NCBI RefSeq assembly: GCF_002113885.1
Contig: NW_018406552.1
Coordinates: forward strand, 960,522 to 1,024,521
Source of the DNA: Mizuhopecten yessoensis
Taxonomy: Eukaryota
Direction of reading: 5' to 3'
DNA: 64,000 nt
Shown here: positions 3,985 to 49,864 of the stretch, piece after piece
Layout of the letters: every line of letters starts with the position of its first letter
How positions within the stretch are numbered: position 1 is the first letter of the stretch
Notes under the pieces: generated by a model
Told to the model about the DNA's origin: nothing
Seen by the model: the letters and a program-made list of their open reading frames with translations, nothing else
Database searches by the model: none
Translations under genes and position numbers: made by a program

Positions 3985-6900
3985 CTATAGGGTGCCTCTC
4001 CTCAGGGCATCCTGGTAAGAGTTGCCCTCCTTCTGCTCTGGTGCTAGTTTGATCAAGTCGTCTATTCTCAGGATCGTGATGGCTGCCTCCGTAGCAAACT
4101 TCAGGGATTTGATCTTGGAAATAGTGGGTTCAAATACACCCTGCTTCTTGTTGTCCTTGACCTTACCTTCATACAGGTCAAGGCCGATCCTGTAATATAA
4201 TTGAGAAGGGGATTAAGACATGTTTGCCTCAGGTACATACACATCTACGTACACATACAACAGTTTATGTTTGTGTGTTGTCAAGGAATACAGGGAAAAT
4301 ATCAGTCTAATAGTTTGACGTGGATGAATGAAGTTATCGGAAATTTAACAATGGCTTCTGCTAAATGCACAAGCCGGGCACAAGTATTGTTGAGAGAGCT
4401 GAATAATACTGCTACAAGTGTCAATGACATACCAATCTCATATGGTGGATAAAGGGAAAGTGTCTACCGATCTGTCATTTTCAATCATAGACCTCTAGGT
4501 ATTGCAAAAAGTTACCCATTACATATTCCTCACCCCCCTCGGAGCAGCTCAAAACTTTTCTCGCCCAGCAGGACAGAAAAATTCTATCTCCGTAAAATAG
4601 ATCCATTTGACTCATCACTTTATGTTTAACAGCAAAGTCATTCTAGAACATACTAAGAAGACTCACCATCTGAGGTCTCGGTGTTCCTGTTTCGTCTGAG
4701 ACATGTTGTGGTAGGCGCGGAGCTTGGCGACTAGGTCGGTGGAGTCCTGAGCGGCATTTACGGCCAGCTGTTTGGGGATGACCAGTAGGGACCGCGCAAA
4801 CTCAGCAATGGCCAGCTGTTCTCGGGATCCCTGTAGCAGATTAAACATAAGGCTAGTTATCCTCAAATTGTAGTATGCAGGTTTACAATGCATTCAGTAG
4901 ACCTCTGAAAGTATTTTTTGACACCTTAATTTTAGCTTTCAGCTCACTTCCTCAACAGTCTGTCTGTCCTCAGAAAAAAATTAGAGTGTTTGTGATTACA
5001 ATCATCAAAATTAAATTCATATAGAATGTTCATCATCGGACAGATGGTTATTTATTACCATATAACCTCTTGGGTTTCCATTGGCTACTCGTCTTAACAT
5101 CCACTTTTCATGTCCTCCAATTAACTGATTTTTCTACCTTTTTTGTAGACATTAAGATTTTTTTATGGGGAAACACAGCAACATTTTCACAAAATTGGGT
5201 AAATACGTATATTTTCAAAGCAATGTAATATTTTCAAAACGATTATGAACCCTTAAAATGCTAAATTCTATATGAAAATATATATTCATCATTTGTAGAA
5301 TATGGGAACAAACAAAAAATTTCAATTTTGCGAACAATTATTTTTTCTCATATTGCAGTAAATTGTTATCAGTTCTTAATTCTCCTTTAGAAAACAGCCC
5401 TTAACAAATGCTAAATGTATACAACAAGCCATTCAGATTAATATGTCTCGCCTATGCCCCGCTTTGACCATCAATGCAATGCACAAATCGATCAGAGAAA
5501 CTAACTTAAACACAAAAACATAATGCTGATGGAGATGCTGACAAAGTCAATGGACCATGAAAGGTAGGCCGCATCCAGCATTTGATGCATGGACTGAGAT
5601 GTACTACCTAAGATGCATGTATGGTCCAAGTTTGGTTGGTCTAGCACATATACTTTTAGAGAAACTAACTTTAATGCAAAATCTTAAAGTTGATGGCGAT
5701 GCTGACAAAGTCAATGGACCATGAAAAGTAGGCTGCATCCAGCATTTGATGCATGTGTTGAGATGTACTACCTAAGGTGCATCTATGGTCTAGGTTTGGT
5801 TGGTTTAGCATTGGTACTTTCAGAGAAACTAACTTAATTGCAAAAACTTGACGCTGCCGTTGCCGGAAAGCAAACACCTAAGTCATGCTTCCACTTTGTG
5901 GCGAGACTACAACCCTTGTAATATTGCATAAAGACATCTCTCCAGCAAAAGAATAAACACAAATAAAAACCGAAAACTTATAAATGATTAAACCTCAGAA
6001 AAAAATTAGAGTGTTTGAATAGTACAATCATCAAAACTTCATAATCTATTTTCATCACAGGTCTAACAGCAAAGCAACACCTATGTTTACCTGTGACTAG
6101 AATCTTCTGATCAGTTTGATATTAAGACTTACAGCTCTGATAATCAAACAACATGAACATTTGTGTAGGGCGTAATCAATTGTATGGTTCAACCTGCTTC
6201 TGCTCTTCTCACAAGTTCTTAGGGTGTCAGCTACCACGGGGTGTATGTGAATTTAACAAATATCAATACCCTTATCCTAATCTTGATACATGTATAACTT
6301 CAGCTTGATCAAGTGACTAGTCAATAAATATAATGCAAAATATCTAAAAGACACCAGTACATCATATTTTATAAGTTGGTCTGACTGATTGTAAAAAAAT
6401 GACAAAATTCCATTTAATCAATCCAATATCAAGCTTTTACAGTGATTTATATTTCAGAAACGCTAACAAGAGCCTGGTAGTTGTCAATTATCAAACATCT
6501 CTACATATCAATGATTGGACTATGTGTCTAAGCTCTCTGTCTGTCCTCAGAAAAAAAATTAGAGTGTATTTTATTACAATCATCAAATTTATATTCATAA
6601 TGAAAGTTCATCACCGGACAGATATATCAGTATATTGAATTATAATCACTTTTATATAAATAACTTTATGTTACTGCTCAATATACACTCTTCTGGCTTA
6701 CTATCACAACATGCACTTTTCATCTTCATCTGCAGGGATATAAAATTCCACTAGCCTGATGCCTGGGGCTCGCAGATTATATGCCAGGACCAAAGGAAAT
6801 TTTAAATATTTACTAAATAAAGAAAACTTTGGAGGGCTAGTAATCTACATAAGAAACTGTTAATACAGTGGAATTTTCACAAAATTAGGAAAATGTGTAT

Positions 6901-9900
6901 TTTCAAAGCAATACAACATAAAGCAAAGTGTATGTAATTACTATATAGTGTATGCCGTCAACTAATATTCAATGTCATGATAAATTTGCCCTCATTAGCT
7001 ATAGGGGGTGCAAGAAAGGCCCACGTGAAACTGCAGCAAAACATTTCCCGGTATACATTAAATATTTTGTCCTCAGAAAAAAATTAGAGTGTTTGAATAA
7101 TACAATCATCAAAACTTCATAATCCATTTTCATCACAGGTCTAACAGCAAAGCAACACCTAATTTCACTAGCCTGATGCCTGGGGCTCTCAGATTATATG
7201 CCAGGACTAGAGGAAATTTTAAATATTAACTAGATAAAGAAAACTTAGGAGGGCTAGCAGAATTTTTTAAAATCTGCCTTTTTGGCTAGTACTTTAAATA
7301 GGAAACTGTTCACCCCTGATCCGTCTTCTTTCACAGAGACGGACATAGGGGCTTTTGATTGTGAAAATACAGTGGAATTTTCATAAAATTAGGAAAATGT
7401 ATATTTTCAAAGCAATAGAACATATAGCGAAGTGTATGTAATTACTATTTATTGTATGCTGTCAACTAATATTCAATGTCATGATAAATTTGCCCTCATT
7501 AGCTATAGGGAGAGCAAAAAAGGCCCAAGTTAAACTACGGCAAAACATTTCCCGGTATACACTAAATATTTTGTCCTCAGAAAAAAATTAGAGTGTTTGA
7601 GTGGAACAATCATCAAAACTTCATAATCCATTTTCATCACAGGTCTAACAGCAAAGCAATACCTATGTTTGCCTGTGACTAGAATCTTCTGATAAGTTTG
7701 ATATTAAGATTTACAGCTCTGATAATCAAACAACATGAACATTTGTGTAGGGCGTAATCAATTGTATGGTTCAACCTGCTTCTGCTCTTCTCACAAGTTC
7801 TTAGGGTGTCAGCTACCACGGGGTGTATGTGAATTTAACAAATATCAATACCCTTATCCTAATCTTGATACATGTATAACTTCAGCTTGACCACGTGACC
7901 AGTCAATAAATATAATGCAAAATATCTAAAAGCTACCAGTACATCCTACTTTATAAGTTGGTCCGACTGATTGTAAAAAAATTGGCAAAATTCCATTTAA
8001 TCAATCCAATATCAAGCTTTTACGGTGATTTATATTTCAGAAACGCCAACAAGAGCCTGGTAGTTGTCTATTATCAAACATCTCTAAATATCAATGTTTA
8101 GTCTAATCTCTAAATATAAATGTTTAGACTATGTGTCTAAGCTGTCTGTCTGTCCTCAGAAAAAAAATTAGAGTGTATTTTATTACAATCATCAAATTTA
8201 TATTCATACTGAAAGTTCATCACCGGACAGATATATCAGTATATTGTATTATAATTGGTTGTATGTATATGTAAATATCTTGATATACATTAAGTATGTT
8301 TTACCGTCTCAATACACTTCACCGGCTTATTATCACAACATGCACTTTTCATCTTCATCTGCAGGGATATACAATTCCACTAGCCTGATGCCTGGGGCTC
8401 GCAGATTATATGCCCGGACTAGAGGAAATTTTAAATATTTACTAGATAAAGAAAACTTAGGAGGGCTAGCAGAATGTTTCAAAATCTGCCTGTGGGCTTG
8501 TACTTCAAATATGAAACTGTTCACTCCTGACCCATCTTCTTTCACAGAGACATATATACAGCTTTTGATTGTGAAAATACAGTGGAATTTTCAAAAAATT
8601 AGGAAAATGTGTATTTTCAAAGCAATATAACAACATACAGCAAAATGTATGTAACTACTATATATTGTATGCTGTCAACTAATATTCAATGTCATGATAA
8701 ATTTGCCCTCATTAGGGGGAGCAAAAAAGGCACAAGTTAAACTGCAACAAATTTTCCTGGTATACACTAAATATTTTGTCCTCAGAAAAAAATTAGAGTG
8801 TTTGAAAGGTACAATCATCAAAACTTCATAATCCATTTTCATCACAGGTCTAACTGCAAAGCAACACCTAACTAATTCCACTAGCCTGATGCCTGGGGCT
8901 CTCAGATTATATGCCAGGACTAGAGGAAATTTTAAATATTTACTAGATAAAGAAAACTTAGGATGGCTAGCAGAGTTTTTTAAAATCTGCCTTTTTGGCT
9001 AGTACTTTAAATAGGAAACTGTTCACCCCTGATCCGTCTTCTTTCACAGAGACGGACATAAAGAAGCTTTTGATTGTGAAAATACAGTGGAATTTTCATA
9101 AAATTAGGAAAATGTATATTTTCAAAGCAATATAACATAGCATAGTGTATGTAATTACTATATATTCTATGCTGTCAACTAATATTCAATGTCATGATAA
9201 ATTTGCCCTCATTAGGGGGAGCAAAAAAGGCCCAAGTTAAACTGCGGCAAAACATTTCTCGGTATACACTAAATATTTTGTCCTCAGAAAAAAATTAGAG
9301 TGTTTGAAAGGTACAATCATCAAAACTTCATAATCCATTTTCATCACAGGTCTAACAGCAAAGCAACACCTATGTTTACCTGTGACTAGAATCTTCTGAT
9401 CAGTTTGATATTAAGACTTACAGCTCTGATAATCAAACAACATGAACATTTGTGTAGGGCGTAATCAATTGTATGGTTCAACCTGCTTCTGCTCTTCTCA
9501 CAAGTTCTTAGGGTGTCAGCTACCACGGGGTGTATGTCAATTNNNNNNNNNNNNNNNNNNNNNNNNNNNNNNNNNNNNNNNNNNNNNNNNNNNNNNNNNN
9601 NNNNNNNNNNNNNNNNNNNNNNNNNNNNNNNNNNNNNNNNNNNNNNNNNNNNNNNNNNNNNNNNNNNNNNNNNNNNNNNNNNNNNNNNNNNNNNNNNNNN
9701 NNNNNNNNNNNNNNNNNNNNNNNNNNNNNNNNNNNNNNNNNNNNNNNNNNNNNNNNNNNNNNNNNNNNNNNNNNNNNNNNNNNNNNNNNNNNNNNNNNNN
9801 NNNNNNNNNNNNNNNNNNNNNNNNNNNNNNNNNNNNNNNNNNNNNNNNNNNNNNNNNNNNNNNNNNNNNNNNNNNNNNNNNNNNNNNNNNNNNNNNNNNN

Positions 9901-12900
9901 NNNNNNNNNNNNNNNNNNNNNNNNNNNNNNNNNNNNNNNNNNNNNNNNNNNNNNNNNNNNNNNNNNNNNNNNNNNNNNNNNNNNNNNNNNNNNNNNNNNN
10001 NNNNNNNNNNNNNNNNNNNNNNNNNNNNNNNNNNNNNNNNNNNNNNNNNNNNNNNNNNNNNNNNNNNNNNNNNNNNNNNNNNNNNNNNNNNNNNNNNNNN
10101 NNNNNNNNNNNNNNNNNNNNNNNNNNNNNNNNNNNNNNNNNNNNNNNNNNNNNNNNNNNNNNNNNNNNNNNNNNNNNNNNNNNNNNNNNNNNNNNNNNNN
10201 NNNNNNNNNNNNNNNNNNNNNNNNNNNNNNNNNNNNNNNNNNNNNNNNNNNNNNNNNNNNNNNNNNNNNNNNNNNNNNNNNNNNNNNNNNNNNNNNNNNN
10301 NNNNNNNNNNNNNNNNNNNNNNNNNNNNNNNNNNNNNNNNNNNNNNNNNNNNNNNNNNNNNNNNNNNNNNNNNNNNNNNNNNNNNNNNNNNNNNNNNNNN
10401 NNNNNNNNNNNNNNNNNNNNNNNATATTTTCCTGTTTGCGTAGAGCACAAAGCCGTTTACTGGAAAGTTACATATTATGTAACACCCAAGTATTTCCACA
10501 TCAACCATGCCAAACCCTTCAAAACCTTTATTATCATCGTAGGTGACGATGGAGAATAAATGTTTACCATCATATGCATCGCTTCAATCTACACGTCCGC
10601 CATTTTTATGACTTTTTTTTCCGATTTGAAATTCTCTCGCACACCTTTGGTTATTAATTACTAGGGTACACTGCCGTGAATATCGAAAGTAATGACAAAA
10701 CAACCAATCAGAAGCCTTCTACTATACGCGTTCGGGTTTGGTATAGCAACAACCCGACTTCACACTTCCTGGCTACCGATCAAAACCTACAGACCGAAAA
10801 ACGACTATTGTCGTGCGTAGCAGTGAGGGCCCGACTTTTCAAAACGACTATTGTCGTGCGTAGCAGTGAGGGCCCGACTTTTCAAAACGACTATTGTCGT
10901 GCGTAGCAGCCTAAGGGTTAAATGACCTGCTTTTTCCTGTCATTAATTAACATACATACATGCATATGGTTTATACTGTCATATAATGAAAATAGGATTT
11001 CTTTTGCTTGCTATTTTCCCAAACATAAAATGATGTATTCCTGCTTATAACACATTGTGATATTAACCCTACTGCCTTTCTTATTATATTTTAAGTCGAA
11101 ATACACAATCTTACTTACCAGTGATGTAGCAAAATTCTCCAAGTAGATAGACAGGGCAGCCTCTACAGCCCCGCCCCCAGGAACGACTGACTTGGACTCC
11201 AAGACACGCTTCACCACACAAAGGGCATCATGGACAGACCGTTCCATCTCATCGCACATGAAGTCGTTGGCTCCACGTAGGAGGATGGAAGCTGCAGATC
11301 TTGCCTTGGTGCTAATGAAAAACAAGAGTATAATAATTATGATATGGGTTGACAAACATTAGGTAGAGCATCTTAACTCTATCCTGGCTGTGTAATGTAG
11401 CCGTCCCCAGTCAGAATAACAAGATTTGGTTTCACAGACGTAATACTTCTTACTTTAGGATGAAAAAGCGTAGTAAGGGGCAATAACTACGACTTACTAT
11501 GTATTCTGTCTTTGCATATTGCAGAGTTATCTTCTCTTGGGAGCAGGTATTGATTGTTACGTCACTTGTTTGTGAGAGTAACGTCATCAATTTATGAGAA
11601 AAAGACGTAATTTTCTCGCACAAACCAATGACGTAACAATCAATACCTGCTCACAAGAGAAGATAACTCTGCAATACGCAAAGACGGAATACACCAAGTG
11701 GCACTACACCGCCTGGGCATCAGTTCCTTTCTTGATGTTTCAGGCAGAGAACATAGGCATTCATTCATAATATAATTATTTGAATTTATTTATGTTGTTT
11801 TAAATGCAGTTATTCCCTGATGACGTAGGTTTATACAAAGAGGAATATAATAGTTATATAATTATGATATGGGCTATCAAATATTATGTATAGTATCTTA
11901 ACTCTCTTTCCAGCTGTGTAGTGCAATTGTCCCTAGTTGGCACACCAAGATTTGATTTCACAGACACAATATTCCTTATTTTGGGCTGGAAATTTGGGAT
12001 GAGACAAAAACAATATCCATCCTTAGGGCAAGATCACAGGATAGATTCAGAATCTCACTTCTGCAATAAAGTACCTCTGTCCCACTGCCGGTAAAACACT
12101 ACAGAATTCCACTGTAGTTTTTCATACATACAATAACCTCTACATTAGTTTCATTTTACATATAATTATAGTAGGACTTGCCAGGAAGCTATCACTGAAC
12201 ATTAAGCTCAGTTGGTCAGAGTGACAGACTGTGATCTGTGGTACTAAGTTTAAATCCCGTTCGTCTGTTGCTTTAATTCATTATTGTCAGAACACTGTCA
12301 TTGATTTCTTTATTTTAAATGTCATCTTTATTATCTTTCTTCATTAGAGTGCCGAGAGATATTGGTTTCTTTAGTGACATATTAAAACTTTGTCATGCTG
12401 GTGGCTGTTTCCAATTCATCGTTAGTTTTAACACTGGTATGAGATCTATAGGCCTATTAACTCATTTACCCCTGAAATTTCATAATGAACTATTCCAACC
12501 TTTGAATGGGAAAAGTTCAAATGTGTTTTTAGGGGTGAATAAGTTATGTGGGATTTTTTGGGGATTTTTTTGTGTGGAATTGATCAGGAAACCAATACAA
12601 TTGTCTTGATTACATGTGTACACCACTGACCCTTTAATGAGGATGAGTTCATCGTCCGAGATACGTTCCTGTATAACCTCCTCTGCCTGTCCAAGCATGC
12701 TCGCGTCAAAAGATTCCTCACCTTCTAAATTGGCCAGAGTCAAAACCAGTTGCCCTAAAAGTACAATACAACAATGGCGTTGAAATACAATCATCACTTT
12801 TCAAATATGTTATTTCATATATTTACAGTTGATTTTCCCTAACATCATGAATTCTTATACCGATGATCAGGAAATTTGAGGGTATTTGCCTTGGTTAAAA

Positions 12901-15900
12901 TATATATTTCACTTTTGTTGCCTTTTTTCACTTCTGAACTACAATTTTTGTCATTGTATTTTGATGCTGTGGTTTATGTTGTCAGTCAATCTATGTTGAC
13001 CCTGTGTTGCTAGTCTATGATGCATCAGATTAGACTGGTAAAATAGTGTATTTAAAACTTATAACACTCCATAGTCAACTAAAATTCACAATTTGAAACC
13101 ATCTTTTTGTCTTGTATTTTGATGCAATAATTCATCTTGTCAATCCATGGTGATACTGTATTGCCAGGGTAGGATGCATTAGATCAGACTGTTGTTCATT
13201 TTTTTTAATGATTTACAACACTTGTCAACTAAAAGTCATAATTTTCCAATTTAAAACTATCTTTGGCGTTAATGTAAGTCTCGGAAGCCTCTTACCGCCC
13301 GTTGCCTTAGCGATCCTCCTCAGATCCACCTTCTTACATCTGCGTACAGCCATGGCACCGGCCTCAACAAAGTACTTGAGGCAGAGGTCATCAATACCTC
13401 CAGTAGTTAAGATAACATTGGCCCCTGTTGCAATGATTTTCTCTATCCTTTCCTTGGTAATATCGGTTTCTCTGGAACAGGAAGATAGTTATTAGTTTGT
13501 TGCTTATATTACCGGCCAGCTACGGTGAAGACATATTACAAAACTAAATACACCAAAAAGAAACTGAACAGTAAAAGTTTAAAAACTGTACACTTAAGTA
13601 TACAGCGAAAATGGTCAGATATTATCATACAAAGAATTTATTATTAAACCAATTTCACGCAGAATTTTGAAAGGAACAGGAAAGAAATTTTACTTGATGG
13701 CCTGAAATGGTTACAATTTCTATTTATTGATCTTTTTCCTGATTTACATTTCAAGTGAAACATCAATTACACAAATCTAGTTAAACTAGAACACGACAGG
13801 TCAGTAAAGGCCCAGTATTGAACTTAACACTATATGAATCCCCTATAATTACATTTAGCAGAAGCCACATCAATCAACTTGGATTTAGAAATATGGGTTA
13901 AAAAAGACAAGGTAATGCCCACAATGAACATTTTCCAAACTTCACAATAAAAAAAAATCGCCCTCGTCTCGTTTTTGCCATGTAAAATGAAAAAAATAAT
14001 ACCGCCCTGCCGCACCTATTTTGAAAGAAATTGGCCTGAGAACCAAGCAATTAATTTTATTTGGCCTTATAAGTCAAGTCTCCAACCTGCGACCCAGTGG
14101 TGAAAAGCTATGTAAGACGCCTTAACCACTGCGGCCCAAAAAAGTGTCGGACAGTGACACTGACTATGGTCAAAAGACATCTTTAATTTTATGATCCTGG
14201 CATATCCATCAAATACTTGGCCATTTATGTTACCACTAAAAGTAACACTTGCAGTCTAAAAATGTAATACAATGTATTTTTGATAGTATACCCCAGTATA
14301 CCCCACTTTTTTAAGTGACATTGACCTTCTGAACTTGTTTAACTCCTATTGCATATCTACATATAAAAGCATATATATATTGTGTGAAACTTCTGAAATC
14401 TTAAAGACTTTTGGATTCTTAAAATATCTGCTTAAATCAAAATTTGGATGAGCAGGGAGATTGACAAATGCACCAATACCTCTGATGCAGGGCCCTTAAA
14501 AAAGGAAATATAGTGAGATTTTCTAGCGCGACATTGTTAACATTTTCTACCGTCCCCTTAAATCTTATGTATCAGATTCAGTATGGTCAGAACTGAAGAT
14601 CTGTTTCAAGTAAGATTGCTCTTGACTGTGAACTAGTACCCCAAATGCAATCTATCACATTCTTGTGAATTAAAGTGAAGTCTACCCAATGATCAATACT
14701 TACTTCTGTCGGACTCCATCAAGGTCTTCTGGGTTTTCAATTAGGATCTGAACACCCATCTTCATCTTTGCTTTCATCAAACCGAAATCTAAACAGGCTA
14801 TCTTTGCATTGGTGATCTTTTTCGGCATGGCTGGTGATAAAAAACACAATGTGAACATACGTTTATTACCGTCATAAAATCTTGAGATAGCAGTATTAAA
14901 CAAAGAATTTCTAAAATTTAAAGAATACATTTCATTTTCATAACTTTCACCGGTATAATTGGCCTACTTATCATGGATTACAGAATAAGTTTGATTTTTT
15001 ACCCCACTTTTACTTCATTTTCATAACTTTCACCGGTATAATTGGCCTACTTATCATGGATTACAGAATAAGTTTGATTTTTTACCCCACTTTTACAACT
15101 TTCTAAAAAAATTGAGCAAATAATTATGAGGATGGTATTCTTTATTATGTCCAAAAAGAATAGAAAAAAATATATAATTGAACTTTCACCAAAAATAATT
15201 TAATTATTTGCAAGTCTTACCTTGTGATGCGACTGTACAGTTAAGAGCGTAGCCCTGGATCAGAGTACTTTCAATTGAACTACGTCCGTGGGCTTTCAGA
15301 ACGTTAACAGCCTTAATTGGATATTTGAACCCTCCCTTTCCATCAGATGTCTTGATAGCATTAGCAGCATCTAACACCATGTTGGAGAAGAAATCTGACT
15401 GGCTGATCAGGTTGTCAAGGTAGATAAGTATTCATCAAGATTTTTGATTGGTTGATTAAATTTGTGTTTTGGCAGCATAACTGTTATTAATTATAGGTTG
15501 ATAACGAACTAGGTGAATATGAAAACATGACAAAATATTGATTTCATGGTCAACTGGCTACAAATATGTACAAAATCATGTGCAACAGAAGTAATGAGCT
15601 TCCACTGGGGAATTCACCCACGAACCCAGACTTCCCAGTCAGACGCTCTACCACTGAGCTAAAGAGAAATTCCCTCTAGCGCGAAGCTAGAAGCTTAAGT
15701 TAATCGTAATCCTATGTACAATTAATACCTTAGATGTAAATTTCTGTCATTGATTCAGTAAATGATCTTTCCTTTAAGAAAAGATCAAAATTCATGAAAC
15801 AAGTCATACTGTGCCCCATTGTATATACTTTCAACTTACATAGAAGCTGAAAGGAAGTTGTATGGGATAAAGTCAAAAACTATTTCAGACTTCACTACTG

Positions 15901-21900: not shown

Positions 21901-22288
21901 GTCAAATATACTAGAATAACTCAAATAAAACGAACATTACATGTTACATTAACTGAAGTATATTTTATTCTATTTCAGTTTCAAAAAACAAATGTTCAAA
22001 ATCACACTTATAAAATCAAAAAGAGTTTTTAATTATTTACACGAAACCCCTTTGGTTACCGGAACATGCCCGAACATTCGAGACCATGTGCGAGTCATGC
22101 TTCTGTTTTGACACCGGTATTTCAGAAGTTGTCGGCTGATAAAAACGTTTTACTGTAACTCGTATGGTACATCACTTAACTGGATGTAAAAGAAATCGGC
22201 ACAATATATCCTTACCATTTTGTGAACGGACAGACTGGCCCGTAGTTCTGTCGCCACCAACAGTGAGAGTAGCCGTAGTGTTTGCCAT
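3985..22288 (-). CDS. TCP1: T-complex protein 1 subunit alpha (CCT1), 12 coding exons, 555 aa
   Basis: Exons in transcript order: 22216-22288, 20822-20907, 19620-19748, 18350-18447, 16355-16465, 15221-15402, 14704-14830, 13296-13471, 12631-12754, 11119-11311, 4667-4830, 3985-4189. Total 1668 nt, in frame with GT-AG boundaries. Chaperonin motifs [38 protein letters not shown] and [14 protein letters not shown] are present. AATAAA on the minus strand at 3730-3735. Confidence 0.98.
4963..5044 (-). ncRNA. Box C/D snoRNA copy 1 (type A), 18S rRNA guide, TCP1 intron 10
   Basis: Minus strand: TCTGTCC-g-ATGATGA (box C) ... ATGA (D') ... TTGATGA (C') ... AACACTCTAATTTTTTT-CTGA (box D)-GGACAGA. Has a 7-bp terminal stem and canonical k-turn spacing. 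Confidence 0.85.
5422..5912. mobile_element. HINE-like element with 164-bp internal repeats, inserted between snoRNA copies 1 and 2
   Basis: subTIRs GTCTCGCC (5445-5452) and GGCGAGAC (5900-5907); AGAGAAACTAACTT recurs at 5494, 5658 and 5822. Confidence 0.65.
5991..6063 (-). ncRNA. Box C/D snoRNA copy 2 (type B)
   Basis: GACC-t-GTGATGA ... TTGATGA ... AACACTCTAATTTTTTT-CTGA-GGTT. Confidence 0.8.
6540..6622 (-). ncRNA. Box C/D snoRNA copy 3 (type A, 8-U guide variant)
   Basis: TCTGTCC-g-GTGATGA ... ACACTCTAATTTTTTTT-CTGA-GGACAGA. Confidence 0.8.
7069..7141 (-). ncRNA. Box C/D snoRNA copy 4 (type B)
   Basis: Boxes C, D', C', D and the 18S guide are intact; the terminal stem is weaker (GACC/GGAC). 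Confidence 0.75.
7573..7645 (-). ncRNA. Box C/D snoRNA copy 5 (type B)
   Basis: Same organisation as copy 4, 504 bp away. Confidence 0.75.
8149..8231 (-). ncRNA. Box C/D snoRNA copy 6 (type A, 8-U guide variant)
   Basis: Same organisation as copy 3, with a 7-bp terminal stem. Confidence 0.8.
8778..8850 (-). ncRNA. Box C/D snoRNA copy 7 (type B)
   Basis: Boxes and guide are intact. Confidence 0.75.
9280..9352 (-). ncRNA. Box C/D snoRNA copy 8 (type B)
   Basis: Boxes and guide are intact; 502 bp from copy 7. Confidence 0.75.
9543..10423. other. Assembly gap (881 N)
   Basis: Run of N directly adjacent to the tandem array. Confidence 1.
10797..10910. repeat. Short tandem repeat, about 43-bp unit, 2.6 copies
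   Basis: AAAACGACTATTGTCGTGCGTAGCAGTGAGGGCCCGACTTTTC repeated. Confidence 0.85.
11502..11691. mobile_element. Palindromic MITE with TA ends in TCP1 intron 9
   Basis: About 75-bp inverted arms: TATTCTGTCTTTGCATATTGCAGAGTTATCTTCTCTTG / CAAGAGAAGATAACTCTGCAATACGCAAAGACGGAATA. Confidence 0.85.
14931..15096. repeat. Perfect 83-bp tandem duplication in TCP1 intron 6
   Basis: Two identical copies starting at 14931 and 15014. Confidence 0.9.
15403..16354 (-). other. U12-type (minor spliceosome) GT-AG intron, TCP1 intron 5
   Basis: 5' splice site GTATCCTTT (16346-16354); branch point CCTTGAC (15414-15420) about 13 nt from the AG; no polypyrimidine tract. Splicing restores [14 protein letters not shown]. 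Confidence 0.92.
17403..18240. repeat. Minisatellite, 52-53-bp unit, about 16 copies (TCP1 intron 4)
   Basis: GAGGGACGGTGTGTGGTGGTTCAGCTTATCAGTTTACTGTGTAGTTTTGCTGT. Confidence 0.97.
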
Positions 22289-49712: not shown

Positions 49713-49864
49713 GGGTTGGCAAGCTCGCCAATTTTGTCACCGGAGAAAGAAAAATGCAATGGCAAGACAGGGTTTCAAACCCAGAACCCTCCGAACTCTA
49801 GACGGATGCTCTACCAATTGAGCTACCTGGTCGCCGACAATCGACCCAGTCCAGTTCGGCTACA
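49713..49864 (-). mobile_element. Family-2 tRNA-containing LTR (130 bp, TGT...ACA) followed by a PBS
   Basis: LTR 49735-49864 has A box TAGCTCAATTGG, a B-box-like GGTTTGAAACC and an oligo-T stretch. It is followed by TGGCGAGCTTGCCA, resembling the complement of a tRNA-Arg 3' end. Confidence 0.7.

What the first reader, a model, noticed from the sequence alone, without database searches (positions are those of the whole stretch)
4963..9542. Tandemly amplified array of at least 8 box C/D snoRNA genes in a single TCP1 intron
Seen: eight 73-83 nt units on the host (minus) strand of intron 10, each with box C (RTGATGA), D'/C', box D (CTGA), k-turn spacing and a terminal stem. There are two subtypes: A (7-bp stem TCTGTCC/GGACAGA) and B. 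Boxes and guide are the parts shared between the otherwise divergent A and B types, which suggests selection. The copies form a higher-order repeat (B-A-B per 1.6-1.7 kb) that runs into the gap, so more copies may be hidden. Established: translation and chaperonin genes, including vertebrate TCP1, host intronic snoRNAs, but vertebrates normally carry one per intron, released by debranching and exonucleolytic trimming. Inference: a multi-copy intron would need internal endonucleolytic cuts, or would yield long snoRNA-capped (sno-lncRNA-like) species between outer copies. Either outcome points to an unusual processing or dosage system.
Basis: partly seen in the sequence, partly recalled or inferred. 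Interest (0 to 1): 0.85.

Follow-up and report, generated by a model that had tools for sequence, protein, structure and literature searches.

The report
Tandem snoRNA gene array in TCP1 intron
One intron of the chaperonin gene TCP1 in this mollusc-like genome carries at least eight tandemly duplicated copies of a small RNA gene predicted to guide methylation of 18S ribosomal RNA. The array is real and well formed, but it is a local example of a gene layout already known from rice and flies, not a new system.

Summary
Eight box C/D snoRNA units, three of type A and five of type B, lie on the host strand of TCP1 intron 10 (11118..4831). They form a 1.6-1.7 kb higher-order repeat (B-B-A) that runs into the N gap.

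All copies keep box C, C', a D'-like AUGA and box D. All keep a 16-17 bp antisense element to this genome's own 18S rRNA (nt 759-775), which predicts 2'-O-methylation of A763, or A762 in A2/A3.

The terminal stem covaries between types. No Rfam family reaches its threshold, so the family is new to Rfam.

New here:
- The same guide family sits in two RPB1 introns, one copy in each.
- Three more copies lie within about 1 kb of a HUWE1-like gene.
- Four small unplaced contigs carry further diverged copies of the array.
- The genome therefore holds at least 16 members.

The few foreign TCP1 and RPB1 loci I could fetch lack this snoRNA, so the array looks lineage-specific.

The claim of an unusual processing or dosage system is not supported by anything testable here. 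Intronic snoRNA gene clusters are already described in rice and Drosophila, and two snoRNAs in one intron is the known precondition for sno-lncRNAs.

Verdict: a real array and a new member of a known kind, of moderate interest.

The parts
4963..5044 (-). snoRNA A1. It is the copy nearest the 3' splice site, with its 3' end 132 nt upstream of the AG at 4832-4831. It has a 7-bp stem and a guide with 7 U, predicting 18S A763.
   Evidence: snoR53Y 30 bits and snoZ196 30.4 bits, both below gathering; R1 90.5 bits
5988..6066 (-). snoRNA B1. It is the only B copy with a complete 7-bp terminal stem (UUAGACC/GGUUUAA). It marks the 3' boundary of the repeated array.
   Evidence: (SNORD47 37.3 bits, below the gathering score of 50)
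6540..6622 (-). snoRNA A2. It has a 7-bp stem and 8 U before box D, so the +5 rule gives 18S A762.
7066..7144 (-). snoRNA B2. Its stem keeps 5 of 7 pairs. It predicts A763.
7570..7648 (-). snoRNA B3. Its stem keeps 5 of 7 pairs. It predicts A763.
8149..8231 (-). snoRNA A3. It has a 7-bp stem and 8 U before box D, predicting A762.
8775..8853 (-). snoRNA B4. Its stem keeps 5 of 7 pairs. It predicts A763.
9277..9355 (-). snoRNA B5. Its stem keeps 5 of 7 pairs. It predicts A763.
5993..9542 (-). Higher-order tandem repeat. The order on the host strand is B5-B4-A3 | B3-B2-A2 | B1. Periods are about 1.6-1.7 kb with a 0.5-kb B sub-unit, and copies are 90-98% identical. It is cut off by the N gap.
9543..10423 (.). 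Assembly gap of 881 N inside the intron.
4831..11118 (-). TCP1 intron 10 as assembled: 6288 nt, with GT at 11118-11117 and AG at 4832-4831.
4667..4830 (-). TCP1 exon 11. It corresponds to residues 431-485 of solved TCP1-alpha chains.
11119..11310 (-). TCP1 exon 10. The approximate 5' end is taken from the reading frame. The 3' end at 11119 is followed by gtaagt.
7436..7561 (-). Truncated fragment of a dispersed repeat with at least 460 candidate copies genome-wide at 74-82% identity. It starts about 13 nt downstream of B3. The same fragment follows B2, B4 and B5 but not B1.
5492..5856 (.). A 164-bp tandem repeat of 2.2 copies in the unique spacer between B1 and A1.

Best explanation
The region is a lineage-specific tandem amplification of a pair of paralogous box C/D snoRNA genes (types A and B) inside intron 10 of TCP1.

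Shown:
- There are eight canonical units, all in the sense orientation of the host.
- All carry one guide that forms a 16-17 bp duplex with this genome's own 18S rRNA at nt 759-775.
- The array was built by duplication of a 0.5-kb B unit and then of a 1.6-1.7 kb B-B-A unit.
- Paralogues with the same guide sit in RPB1 and HUWE1-like introns.

Inferred:
- The RNAs are co-transcribed with TCP1 pre-mRNA and assemble with the core box C/D proteins on each C/D motif. The 6-7 bp terminal stems, not a fixed distance to the branch point, would support this assembly.
- They are freed from the excised, debranched intron by exonucleolytic trimming, plus either endonucleolytic cuts between units or snoRNA-capped intermediates.
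- They direct fibrillarin to 2'-O-methylate an adenosine of the 18S A-run: A763 for most copies and A762 for A2/A3.
- The amplification most likely arose by unequal crossing-over in a genome prone to intronic tandem arrays. It raises the gene dose of one guide and does not create a new mechanism.
For: Anatomy: boxes C, D', C' and D and the 18-nt guide are invariant in all 11 TCP1-type copies, while the spacers and flanks differ.

Stem: 86.8% of cells pair, against 13-43% when the partner is slid. Three pairs change on both sides between the A type and B1. The RPB1 copies have further different 7-bp stems.

Target: the duplex to the own 18S (L025 742-2555, Rfam SSU 1786 bits) is 17 bp for A1, B and the RPB1 copies, 16 bp for A2/A3 and 15 bp for the HUWE1-like E1 and E3.

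Specificity: guide plus box D occurs 16 times in 988 Mb, always in these contexts, with zero hits for the reversed control. All copies are sense to their hosts TCP1, RPB1 and the UBM-repeat gene.

Array structure. Copies differ by 2-10% with indels, so this is not a collapsed or duplicated assembly of one unit. Extra diverged copies lie on unplaced contigs.

Constraint: 0 of 39 box and guide columns vary among B2-B5, against 28 of 223 flank columns (Fisher p = 0.011). All 5 variable snoRNA columns lie in spacers.

Precedent for the layout: PMC2780460, PMC8351944, PMC4234469.
Against: - No expression, fibrillarin-association or methylation data could be reached.
- No Rfam family reaches its gathering score. 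The best are SNORD47 at 37 bits against 50 and snoR53Y at 30 against 43.
- To my knowledge, which I did not check against a database, the predicted site is not on the human or yeast 2'-O-methylation maps.
- There is no cross-species support. Four foreign TCP1 loci and four foreign RPB1 loci have no hit to the model and no guide word. Their taxa are unknown and they share only exon similarity.
- B2-B5 have lost 2 of 7 stem pairs. A2/A3 carry an extra U that shifts the register.
- A 42-nt stretch of the transposon-derived flank is also invariant among B2-B5 (alignment), so zero variation in 39 nt is not strong proof of selection on each copy.
- No copy, A1 included at 132 nt, sits at the 70-80 nt distance from a 3' splice site that favours splicing-dependent assembly in mammals. 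That distance is from my own knowledge of Hirose and Steitz 2001.
Confidence: 0.8

Rival explanations
1. Only one or two copies work, most likely A1 and/or B1 together with the RPB1 paralogues. The internal B-B-A repeats would be young, neutral by-products of intronic tandem duplication that have not yet decayed and add little or no mature snoRNA.
For: - B2-B5 have weakened stems of 5/7 pairs, while B1 has 7/7.
- A2/A3 have an 8-U run that moves the predicted target by one nucleotide.
- The repeat units carry a truncated dispersed-repeat fragment and look like ordinary segmental duplications.
- The invariant transposon-derived stretch shows that long unchanged runs occur without function.
- Other first-stage notes report many intronic tandem arrays in this genome (untested).
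Against: - Units have diverged by 6-10% in their flanks, yet none of 11 copies has a single change in any box or in the 16-nt guide core.
- The changes that do occur inside the snoRNAs cluster in the spacers.
- A2/A3 and the unplaced C68225 copy keep perfect 7-bp stems.
Confidence: 0.3
2. The array is a special expression device. It would yield long snoRNA-capped RNAs (sno-lncRNA-like, 430-950 nt inserts) or need a dedicated endonuclease, giving regulated dosage or a function beyond rRNA methylation.
For: Eight snoRNAs in one intron meet the structural prerequisite for sno-lncRNAs given in PMC4234469. Spacers between units are 429-946 nt.
Against: - Nothing in the sequence calls for it.
- Intronic clusters in rice and Drosophila are reported as an ordinary layout (PMC2780460, PMC8351944).
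- In human cells only a minority of snoRNA pairs in one intron give detectable sno-lncRNAs: 7 from 48 paired snoRNAs (PMC4234469).
- The spacers are repeat-derived and evolve freely.
Confidence: 0.12
3. The array is an assembly artefact: haplotigs or a single unit were mis-assembled into an array.
For: The assembly is fragmented (82,659 contigs). There is a gap inside the array. One unplaced contig is a 100% duplicate of 6555-6911.
Against: - The three higher-order units differ by 6-10% with many indels and have a nested 0.5-kb sub-repeat. An assembler would not generate this from one unit.
- Four further contigs are 4-10% diverged from every assembled copy.
Confidence: 0.03
4. The units are not snoRNA genes. 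They would be a repeat or mobile element that merely resembles box C/D RNAs.
For: No Rfam family passes threshold. The family occurs in introns of three unrelated genes.
Against: - The units form a 15-17 bp duplex with the genome's own 18S, placed exactly upstream of box D.
- Terminal stems covary across five subtypes.
- There are only about 16 copies, all sense to expressed housekeeping hosts.
- By eye, no A-tails follow any copy.
Confidence: 0.04

Closest known systems
Intronic snoRNA gene clusters of rice (Liang et al. 2002) and Drosophila melanogaster (Huang et al. 2004, 2005), as cited in PMC2780460, PMC8351944 and PMC5932544
   Same: Several snoRNA genes lie on the host strand inside a single spliceosomal intron of a host gene. 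Clusters often consist of isoforms made by local duplication.
   Different: This case is a mollusc-like genome. All members are box C/D isoforms with one and the same guide, whereas the Drosophila 2004 title concerns box H/ACA clusters. They are arranged as a higher-order tandem repeat of at least 8 copies. I could not read the primary papers, so the comparison rests on how later papers describe them.
Mammalian SNORD116/SNORD115 tandem arrays and the sno-lncRNAs of the Prader-Willi region (PMC4234469)
   Same: There are many tandem copies of one box C/D snoRNA. Two or more copies in one intron can cap a stable intron-derived RNA.
   Different: Per PMC4234469, the Prader-Willi sno-lncRNAs arise where alternative splicing of the SNURF-SNRPN host puts two SNORD116 copies into one intron. 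From my own knowledge, unchecked here, the mammalian copies are orphans that normally sit one per intron of a repeated non-coding host. Here all copies share one intron of a protein-coding housekeeping gene and have a clear rRNA target.
Rfam box C/D families SNORD47 (RF00281), snoR53Y (RF01279, clan CL00080) and snoZ196 (RF00134)
   Same: They share the generic C/D architecture, and hits span the full model length.
   Different: All scores are below gathering: 37 against 50, 30 against 43 and 30 against 55. The aligned guide regions of these families do not match this guide. The resemblance is architectural only.
Vertebrate-style 'one snoRNA per intron' hosts, including vertebrate TCP1
   Same: The host is a housekeeping chaperonin gene and the snoRNA is sense to it. 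The two RPB1 paralogues in this genome follow the one-per-intron rule.
   Different: The TCP1 intron here holds at least 8 copies. No copy is at the 70-80 nt distance from the 3' splice site.

Membership tests
Box C/D snoRNA (2'-O-methylation guide) | Box C (RUGAUGA) near the 5' end and box D (CUGA) near the 3' end | tested here: met
   Both boxes are invariant in all 8 window copies and in 8 further genomic copies.
Box C/D snoRNA (2'-O-methylation guide) | A terminal stem brings C and D together | tested here: met
   The stem is 7 bp in A1-A3, B1 and the RPB1 copies, 6 bp in the HUWE1-like copies and 5/7 in B2-B5. Overall 86.8% of cells pair, with 3 pairs changed on both sides.
Box C/D snoRNA (2'-O-methylation guide) | Internal C' and D' boxes | tested here: met
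   C' UGAUGA is invariant in types A and B. D' is a degenerate AUGA in A and B and a canonical CUGA in the HUWE1-like type. The C-to-D' spacer is only 9 nt, so no second guide is likely.
Box C/D snoRNA (2'-O-methylation guide) | An antisense element of at least 10 nt directly upstream of box D, complementary to rRNA or snRNA | tested here: met
   There are 15-17 contiguous pairs (one G.U) with the genome's own 18S nt 759-775. The +5 rule gives A763, A762 or A761.
Box C/D snoRNA (2'-O-methylation guide) | A stable 60-100 nt RNA bound by fibrillarin, NOP56, NOP58 and SNU13, with the target site methylated | not testable with these tools
   No transcriptome or modification data can be reached.
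Any curated Rfam 15 snoRNA family | Score at or above the family's gathering threshold | tested here: not met
   The gathering scan of the window finds only a tRNA. The best sub-threshold hits are SNORD47 at 37.3 against 50 and snoR53Y at 30 against 43.
Intronic snoRNA gene cluster (rice/Drosophila type) | Two or more snoRNA genes inside one intron, on the host's strand | tested here: met
   Eight copies lie between exon 10 (ends 11119) and exon 11 (starts 4830) of TCP1, all on the minus strand.
Intronic snoRNA gene cluster (rice/Drosophila type) | Members are processed from the host pre-mRNA intron | not testable with these tools
   This needs RNA data.
sno-lncRNA locus | Two snoRNAs within one intron (the prerequisite in PMC4234469) | tested here: met
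   Seven adjacent pairs have 429-946 nt between them.
sno-lncRNA locus | A stable non-polyadenylated RNA with snoRNA ends accumulates | not testable with these tools
   This needs poly(A)-minus RNA-seq or a northern blot.
SNORD115/116-type array | Each repeat unit has its own exon, so that each snoRNA lies in its own intron | tested here: inconclusive
   No exon is evident in the units. A strong acceptor-like site lies 70 nt downstream of B3 and B2 only (7503 and 6999) and is absent from B4/B5. Without RNA data, cryptic exons cannot be excluded.
Retroposed snoRNA copy (snoRT) | A 3' A-tail and target-site duplications flank the copy | tested here: not met
   By eye, no A-rich tail follows any of the eight copies. 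Copies sit inside longer segmental repeat units. I made no formal search for target-site duplications.

The most novel reading that the evidence does not exclude
The amplified family is a set of register-shifted guides. Most copies place A763 at the +5 position, A2/A3 (8 U) place A762 there, and the HUWE1-like copies (extra CU before box D) place A761 there. Together they would methylate up to three neighbouring adenosines of an 18S A-run that, as far as I know, is unmodified at the ribose in human and yeast. In addition, the multi-copy TCP1 intron would produce snoRNA-capped long RNAs in a protostome.
Probability: 0.15. Interest if true: 0.6.

Novelty: new member of a known kind. Interest (0 to 1): 0.38.

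Why it matters
If the copies are expressed, this would be a compact natural test case in an animal outside flies and vertebrates. It would show how many box C/D snoRNAs can be released from a single intron of a protein-coding gene. It could also show whether snoRNA-capped RNAs form by default.

The family is absent from Rfam. Its predicted 18S target is not on the familiar human or yeast maps. It therefore adds to the thin record of lophotrochozoan snoRNAs.

The layout itself has precedents, and nothing here shows a new mechanism.

Tried and rejected
1. Rfam membership: no family reaches gathering. The snoR53Y hit looked like a lead, but its guide regions do not match this guide, so I dropped it.
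2. Whole-genome searches with the Rfam SSU model and with my covariance model R1 both failed on the server. I used pattern and DNA searches instead.
3. B snoRNA as part of a transposon: rejected. The dispersed repeat starts about 13 nt downstream of the snoRNA, and the dispersed copies lack the snoRNA.
4. Cross-species conservation: exon-11 and RPB1-exon ORF searches gave foreign loci. None has an R1 hit or the guide word. Their taxa are unknown and only their exons align. This says the array is not widely shared, but nothing about close relatives.
5. A search with a spurious ORF spanning B4, meant to catch other assemblies of the array, found nothing.
6. External stems for type B: folds are inconsistent and z-scores are near 0, so no claim is made.
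7. Cryptic acceptor sites after each copy: present only after B3 and B2, which is one independent event. The real acceptor scores lower than my cut-off. I kept this as an idea only.
8. The Arabidopsis modification paper has no text hit for Am758-763, which is uninformative.
9. The spliced TCP1 model was never joined. The N gap was not filled. No fetched contig was taken for human.


Full report
**What is there.**
- Type A: A1 4963-5044, A2 6540-6622, A3 8149-8231.
- Type B: B1 5991-6063, B2 7069-7141, B3 7573-7645, B4 8778-8850, B5 9280-9352.

Every generic C/D model aligns end to end, but none reaches its gathering score. SNORD47 scores at most 37.3 against 50, snoR53Y 30 against 43 and snoZ196 30.4 against 55. 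The gathering scan of the whole window finds only a tRNA at 49760-49832. The family is therefore not in Rfam 15.

**Host gene.** Stop-to-stop frames on the minus strand give eleven TCP1-like exons and a short exon 1 at 22288.
- Exon 11 (4830-4667) aligns to residues 431-485 of solved T-complex protein 1 subunit alpha chains at E = 3e-21. The other CCT subunits score far worse.
- Exon 10 ends at 11119 and is followed by gtaagt. The acceptor AG is at 4832-4831. The exon 11 donor and exon 12 acceptor are in frame.
- Intron 10 is therefore 11118..4831, which is 6288 nt as assembled and includes an 881-N gap at 9543-10423.
- The exons were searched singly by reference.

**Anatomy of the units.** Alignments of the eight copies, and of eleven copies including three from unplaced contigs, show the same pattern.
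- Box C (RUGAUGA), an AUGA at the D' position, UGAUGA (C'), the 16-nt guide core and box D (CUGA) are identical in all copies.
- The C-to-D' spacer, the C'-to-guide spacer and the flanks differ strongly between A and B.
- The terminal stem pairs in 86.8% of cells, against 13-43% when the 3' partner is slid by 1-3 columns. Three of seven pairs change on both sides between UCUGUCC/GGACAGA (type A) and UUAGACC/GGUUUAA (B1).
- B2-B5 end in GGACAAA and keep only five of seven pairs.
- Single-sequence folds recover the type A stem but are otherwise unremarkable, with z-scores of -0.95 to +1.0. I would expect this for protein-bound C/D RNAs.

**Predicted target.** The genome's own 18S (L025 742-2555, Rfam SSU model 1786 bits) contains the exact complement of the guide. 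A script that enforces pairing at the fifth nucleotide upstream of box D gave the following.
- A1, all B copies and the RPB1 paralogues: a 17-bp duplex with one G.U, to 18S 759-775, target A763.
- A2, A3 and the C68225 copy: 16 bp. Their run of eight U moves the target to A762.
- A 16-17 nt match to about 2 kb of rRNA, placed exactly at box D, is not a chance event.
- From my own knowledge, not checked against a database, the two U that follow this A-run correspond to pseudouridines 814/815 of human 18S. No ribose methylation is listed in the A-run for human or yeast. An earlier first-stage note on this window (s1-509094) says the same.

**The array.** Self-comparison gives the order B5-B4-A3 | B3-B2-A2 | B1 on the host strand.
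- The higher-order period is 1582-1707 nt, with a nested B unit of about 502-504 nt. Identities are 90-98%.
- Homology reaches the gap edge at 9542. The repeated region ends exactly at the 3' end of B1 (5993).
- Then come 946 nt of unique sequence, which includes a 164-bp tandem repeat, and then A1. A1's 3' end is 132 nt upstream of the acceptor.
- A1 shares only the snoRNA itself with A2/A3: 89 aligned nt at 88.7%.
- A segment beginning about 13 nt downstream of B2-B5 is a truncated copy of a dispersed repeat with at least 460 candidate copies. The dispersed copies do not contain the snoRNA.
- Because the units differ by 2-10% with indels, the array cannot be an assembler's duplication of one unit.
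- Contigs C68225, C67646, C40395 and C21019 carry pieces that are 4-10% diverged from every assembled unit. Three of them hold further snoRNA copies. These are either hidden units of the gap or a divergent haplotype.

**More of the family elsewhere (new).** A pattern search of the 988-Mb genome for guide plus box D finds 16 sites and none for the reversed control.
- Two copies lie in two different introns of RPB1 (L037 2746-2821 and 4501-4576). Neighbouring exons hit Pfam RNA_pol_Rpb1_1 and RNA_pol_Rpb1_2, and named RPB1 fragments. The guide is identical and the 7-bp stems are new, covarying ones.
- Three copies lie within about 1 kb of a gene with UBM repeats, HUWE1-like (L051 6785-6864, 7006-7087, 7695-7778). 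Two of them are only 141 nt apart, so they share an intron.
- These three have a canonical CUGA D' box and two extra nucleotides before box D. That puts A761 at +5 in E1 and E3. E2 has two mismatches in the guide.
- All copies are sense to their hosts. The snoRNA reading is therefore well supported, and a multi-copy intron is not unique to TCP1 in this genome.

**Are the internal copies under selection?** Among B2-B5, none of 39 box and guide columns varies. This compares with 28 of 223 ungapped flank columns and 5 of 30 spacer columns inside the snoRNA (Fisher p about 0.011-0.013). That is suggestive but not strong. The copies are not independent, and the same alignment shows a 42-nt invariant stretch in the transposon-derived flank. 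The much older A/B split, and the RPB1 and HUWE1-like paralogues, show long-term constraint on boxes and guide for the family as a whole, not for each array unit.

**Cross-species check.** Using the exon-11 ORF and an RPB1 exon as handles, I fetched four foreign TCP1 loci and four foreign RPB1 loci.
- The foreign TCP1 loci have an intron 10 of roughly 110-1050 nt.
- None has a hit to model R1 or the guide word, and none has any Rfam gathering hit.
- Only exons align to the window, at 75-83%, and the taxa are unknown. This shows only that the array is not widely shared.
- A search meant to catch other assemblies of the array found nothing.

**Mechanism and comparison.** Two facts stand: many sense-strand C/D units in one intron, and a clear rRNA guide. 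Their release from the intron is inferred.
- No copy sits at the distance from the acceptor that favours splicing-coupled assembly in mammals. That distance is from my knowledge of Hirose and Steitz 2001.
- The long terminal stems of A1-A3, B1 and the paralogues fit stem-assisted, position-independent assembly.
- Internal units then need either endonucleolytic cuts or they would leave snoRNA-capped intermediates.
- Both outcomes have precedents. [quoted passage not shown] Two snoRNAs in one intron is the stated prerequisite for sno-lncRNAs, although only 7 such RNAs were seen from 48 paired human snoRNAs (PMC4234469).
- I could not open the primary Drosophila paper. A literature search found nothing on mollusc snoRNA organisation.

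**Verdict.** These are very probably genuine snoRNA genes amplified in tandem, but the inference of an unusual processing or dosage system has no support beyond the layout, and the layout is of a known kind. I class the array as a new member of a known kind, with interest of about 0.4.

The assembly statistics (988 Mb, 82,659 contigs) remind me of a published scallop assembly, but I did not test this.

Noticed in passing
L037 2746-2821 and 4501-4576 (G000:C2222:200745-200820 and 202500-202575, + strand): Two further box C/D snoRNAs with the identical 18S guide lie one per intron in two introns of the RPB1 gene. Each has its own 7-bp terminal stem. They lie roughly 400-700 nt upstream of the next exon.
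   Followed up: partly
L051 6785-6864, 7006-7087, 7695-7778 (G000:C76676, minus strand): Three related box C/D snoRNAs lie within about 1 kb of a UBM-repeat (HUWE1-like) gene, with a canonical CUGA D' box. Two extra nucleotides before box D shift the predicted 18S target to A761. One copy (6785-6864) has two guide mismatches and may be decaying.
   Followed up: partly
window 6540-6622 and 8149-8231; also contig C68225: Type A2/A3 copies have eight U before box D where the other copies have seven. This moves the predicted methylated base from A763 to A762. With the HUWE1-like copies (A761), the family covers three adjacent registers. A homopolymer sequencing error cannot be excluded.
   Followed up: partly
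window 7436-7561, and the same segment after B2, B4 and B5: A truncated fragment of a dispersed repeat, with at least 460 candidate copies in the genome at 74-82% identity, lies about 13 nt downstream of B2-B5 and was amplified along with them.
   Followed up: partly
window 7503 and 6999 (minus strand): The two strongest acceptor-like sites of the intron (15-16 of 17 pyrimidines followed by TAG) lie exactly 70 nt downstream of B3 and B2. B4 and B5 lack them because of a 6-nt deletion. This could be a cryptic or recursive splice site, or chance.
   Followed up: partly
window 10798-10909: A perfect 43-bp tandem repeat (2.6 copies, 100% identical) lies in the 5' part of intron 10 and is unrelated to the snoRNA array.
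   Followed up: no
window 5492-5856: A 164-bp tandem repeat (2.2 copies, 85% identical) lies in the unique spacer between B1 and A1.
   Followed up: no
window 49760-49832 (minus strand): A tRNA gene was called by Rfam at 40.7 bits. It is the only gathering-level RNA hit in the window.
   Followed up: no
G000 contigs C68225, C67646, C40395, C21019, C46346: Small unplaced contigs (234-709 bp) carry pieces of the array. Four are 4-10% diverged from all assembled units, so they are extra units or another haplotype. C46346 is an exact duplicate of 6555-6911.
   Followed up: yes
window 14931-15096: A perfect 83-bp tandem duplication (2.0 copies) lies in the TCP1 intron between the exons in frames 15207-15431 and 14703-14963. 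Its 3' end overlaps the upstream, non-coding part of the 14703-14963 frame.
   Followed up: no
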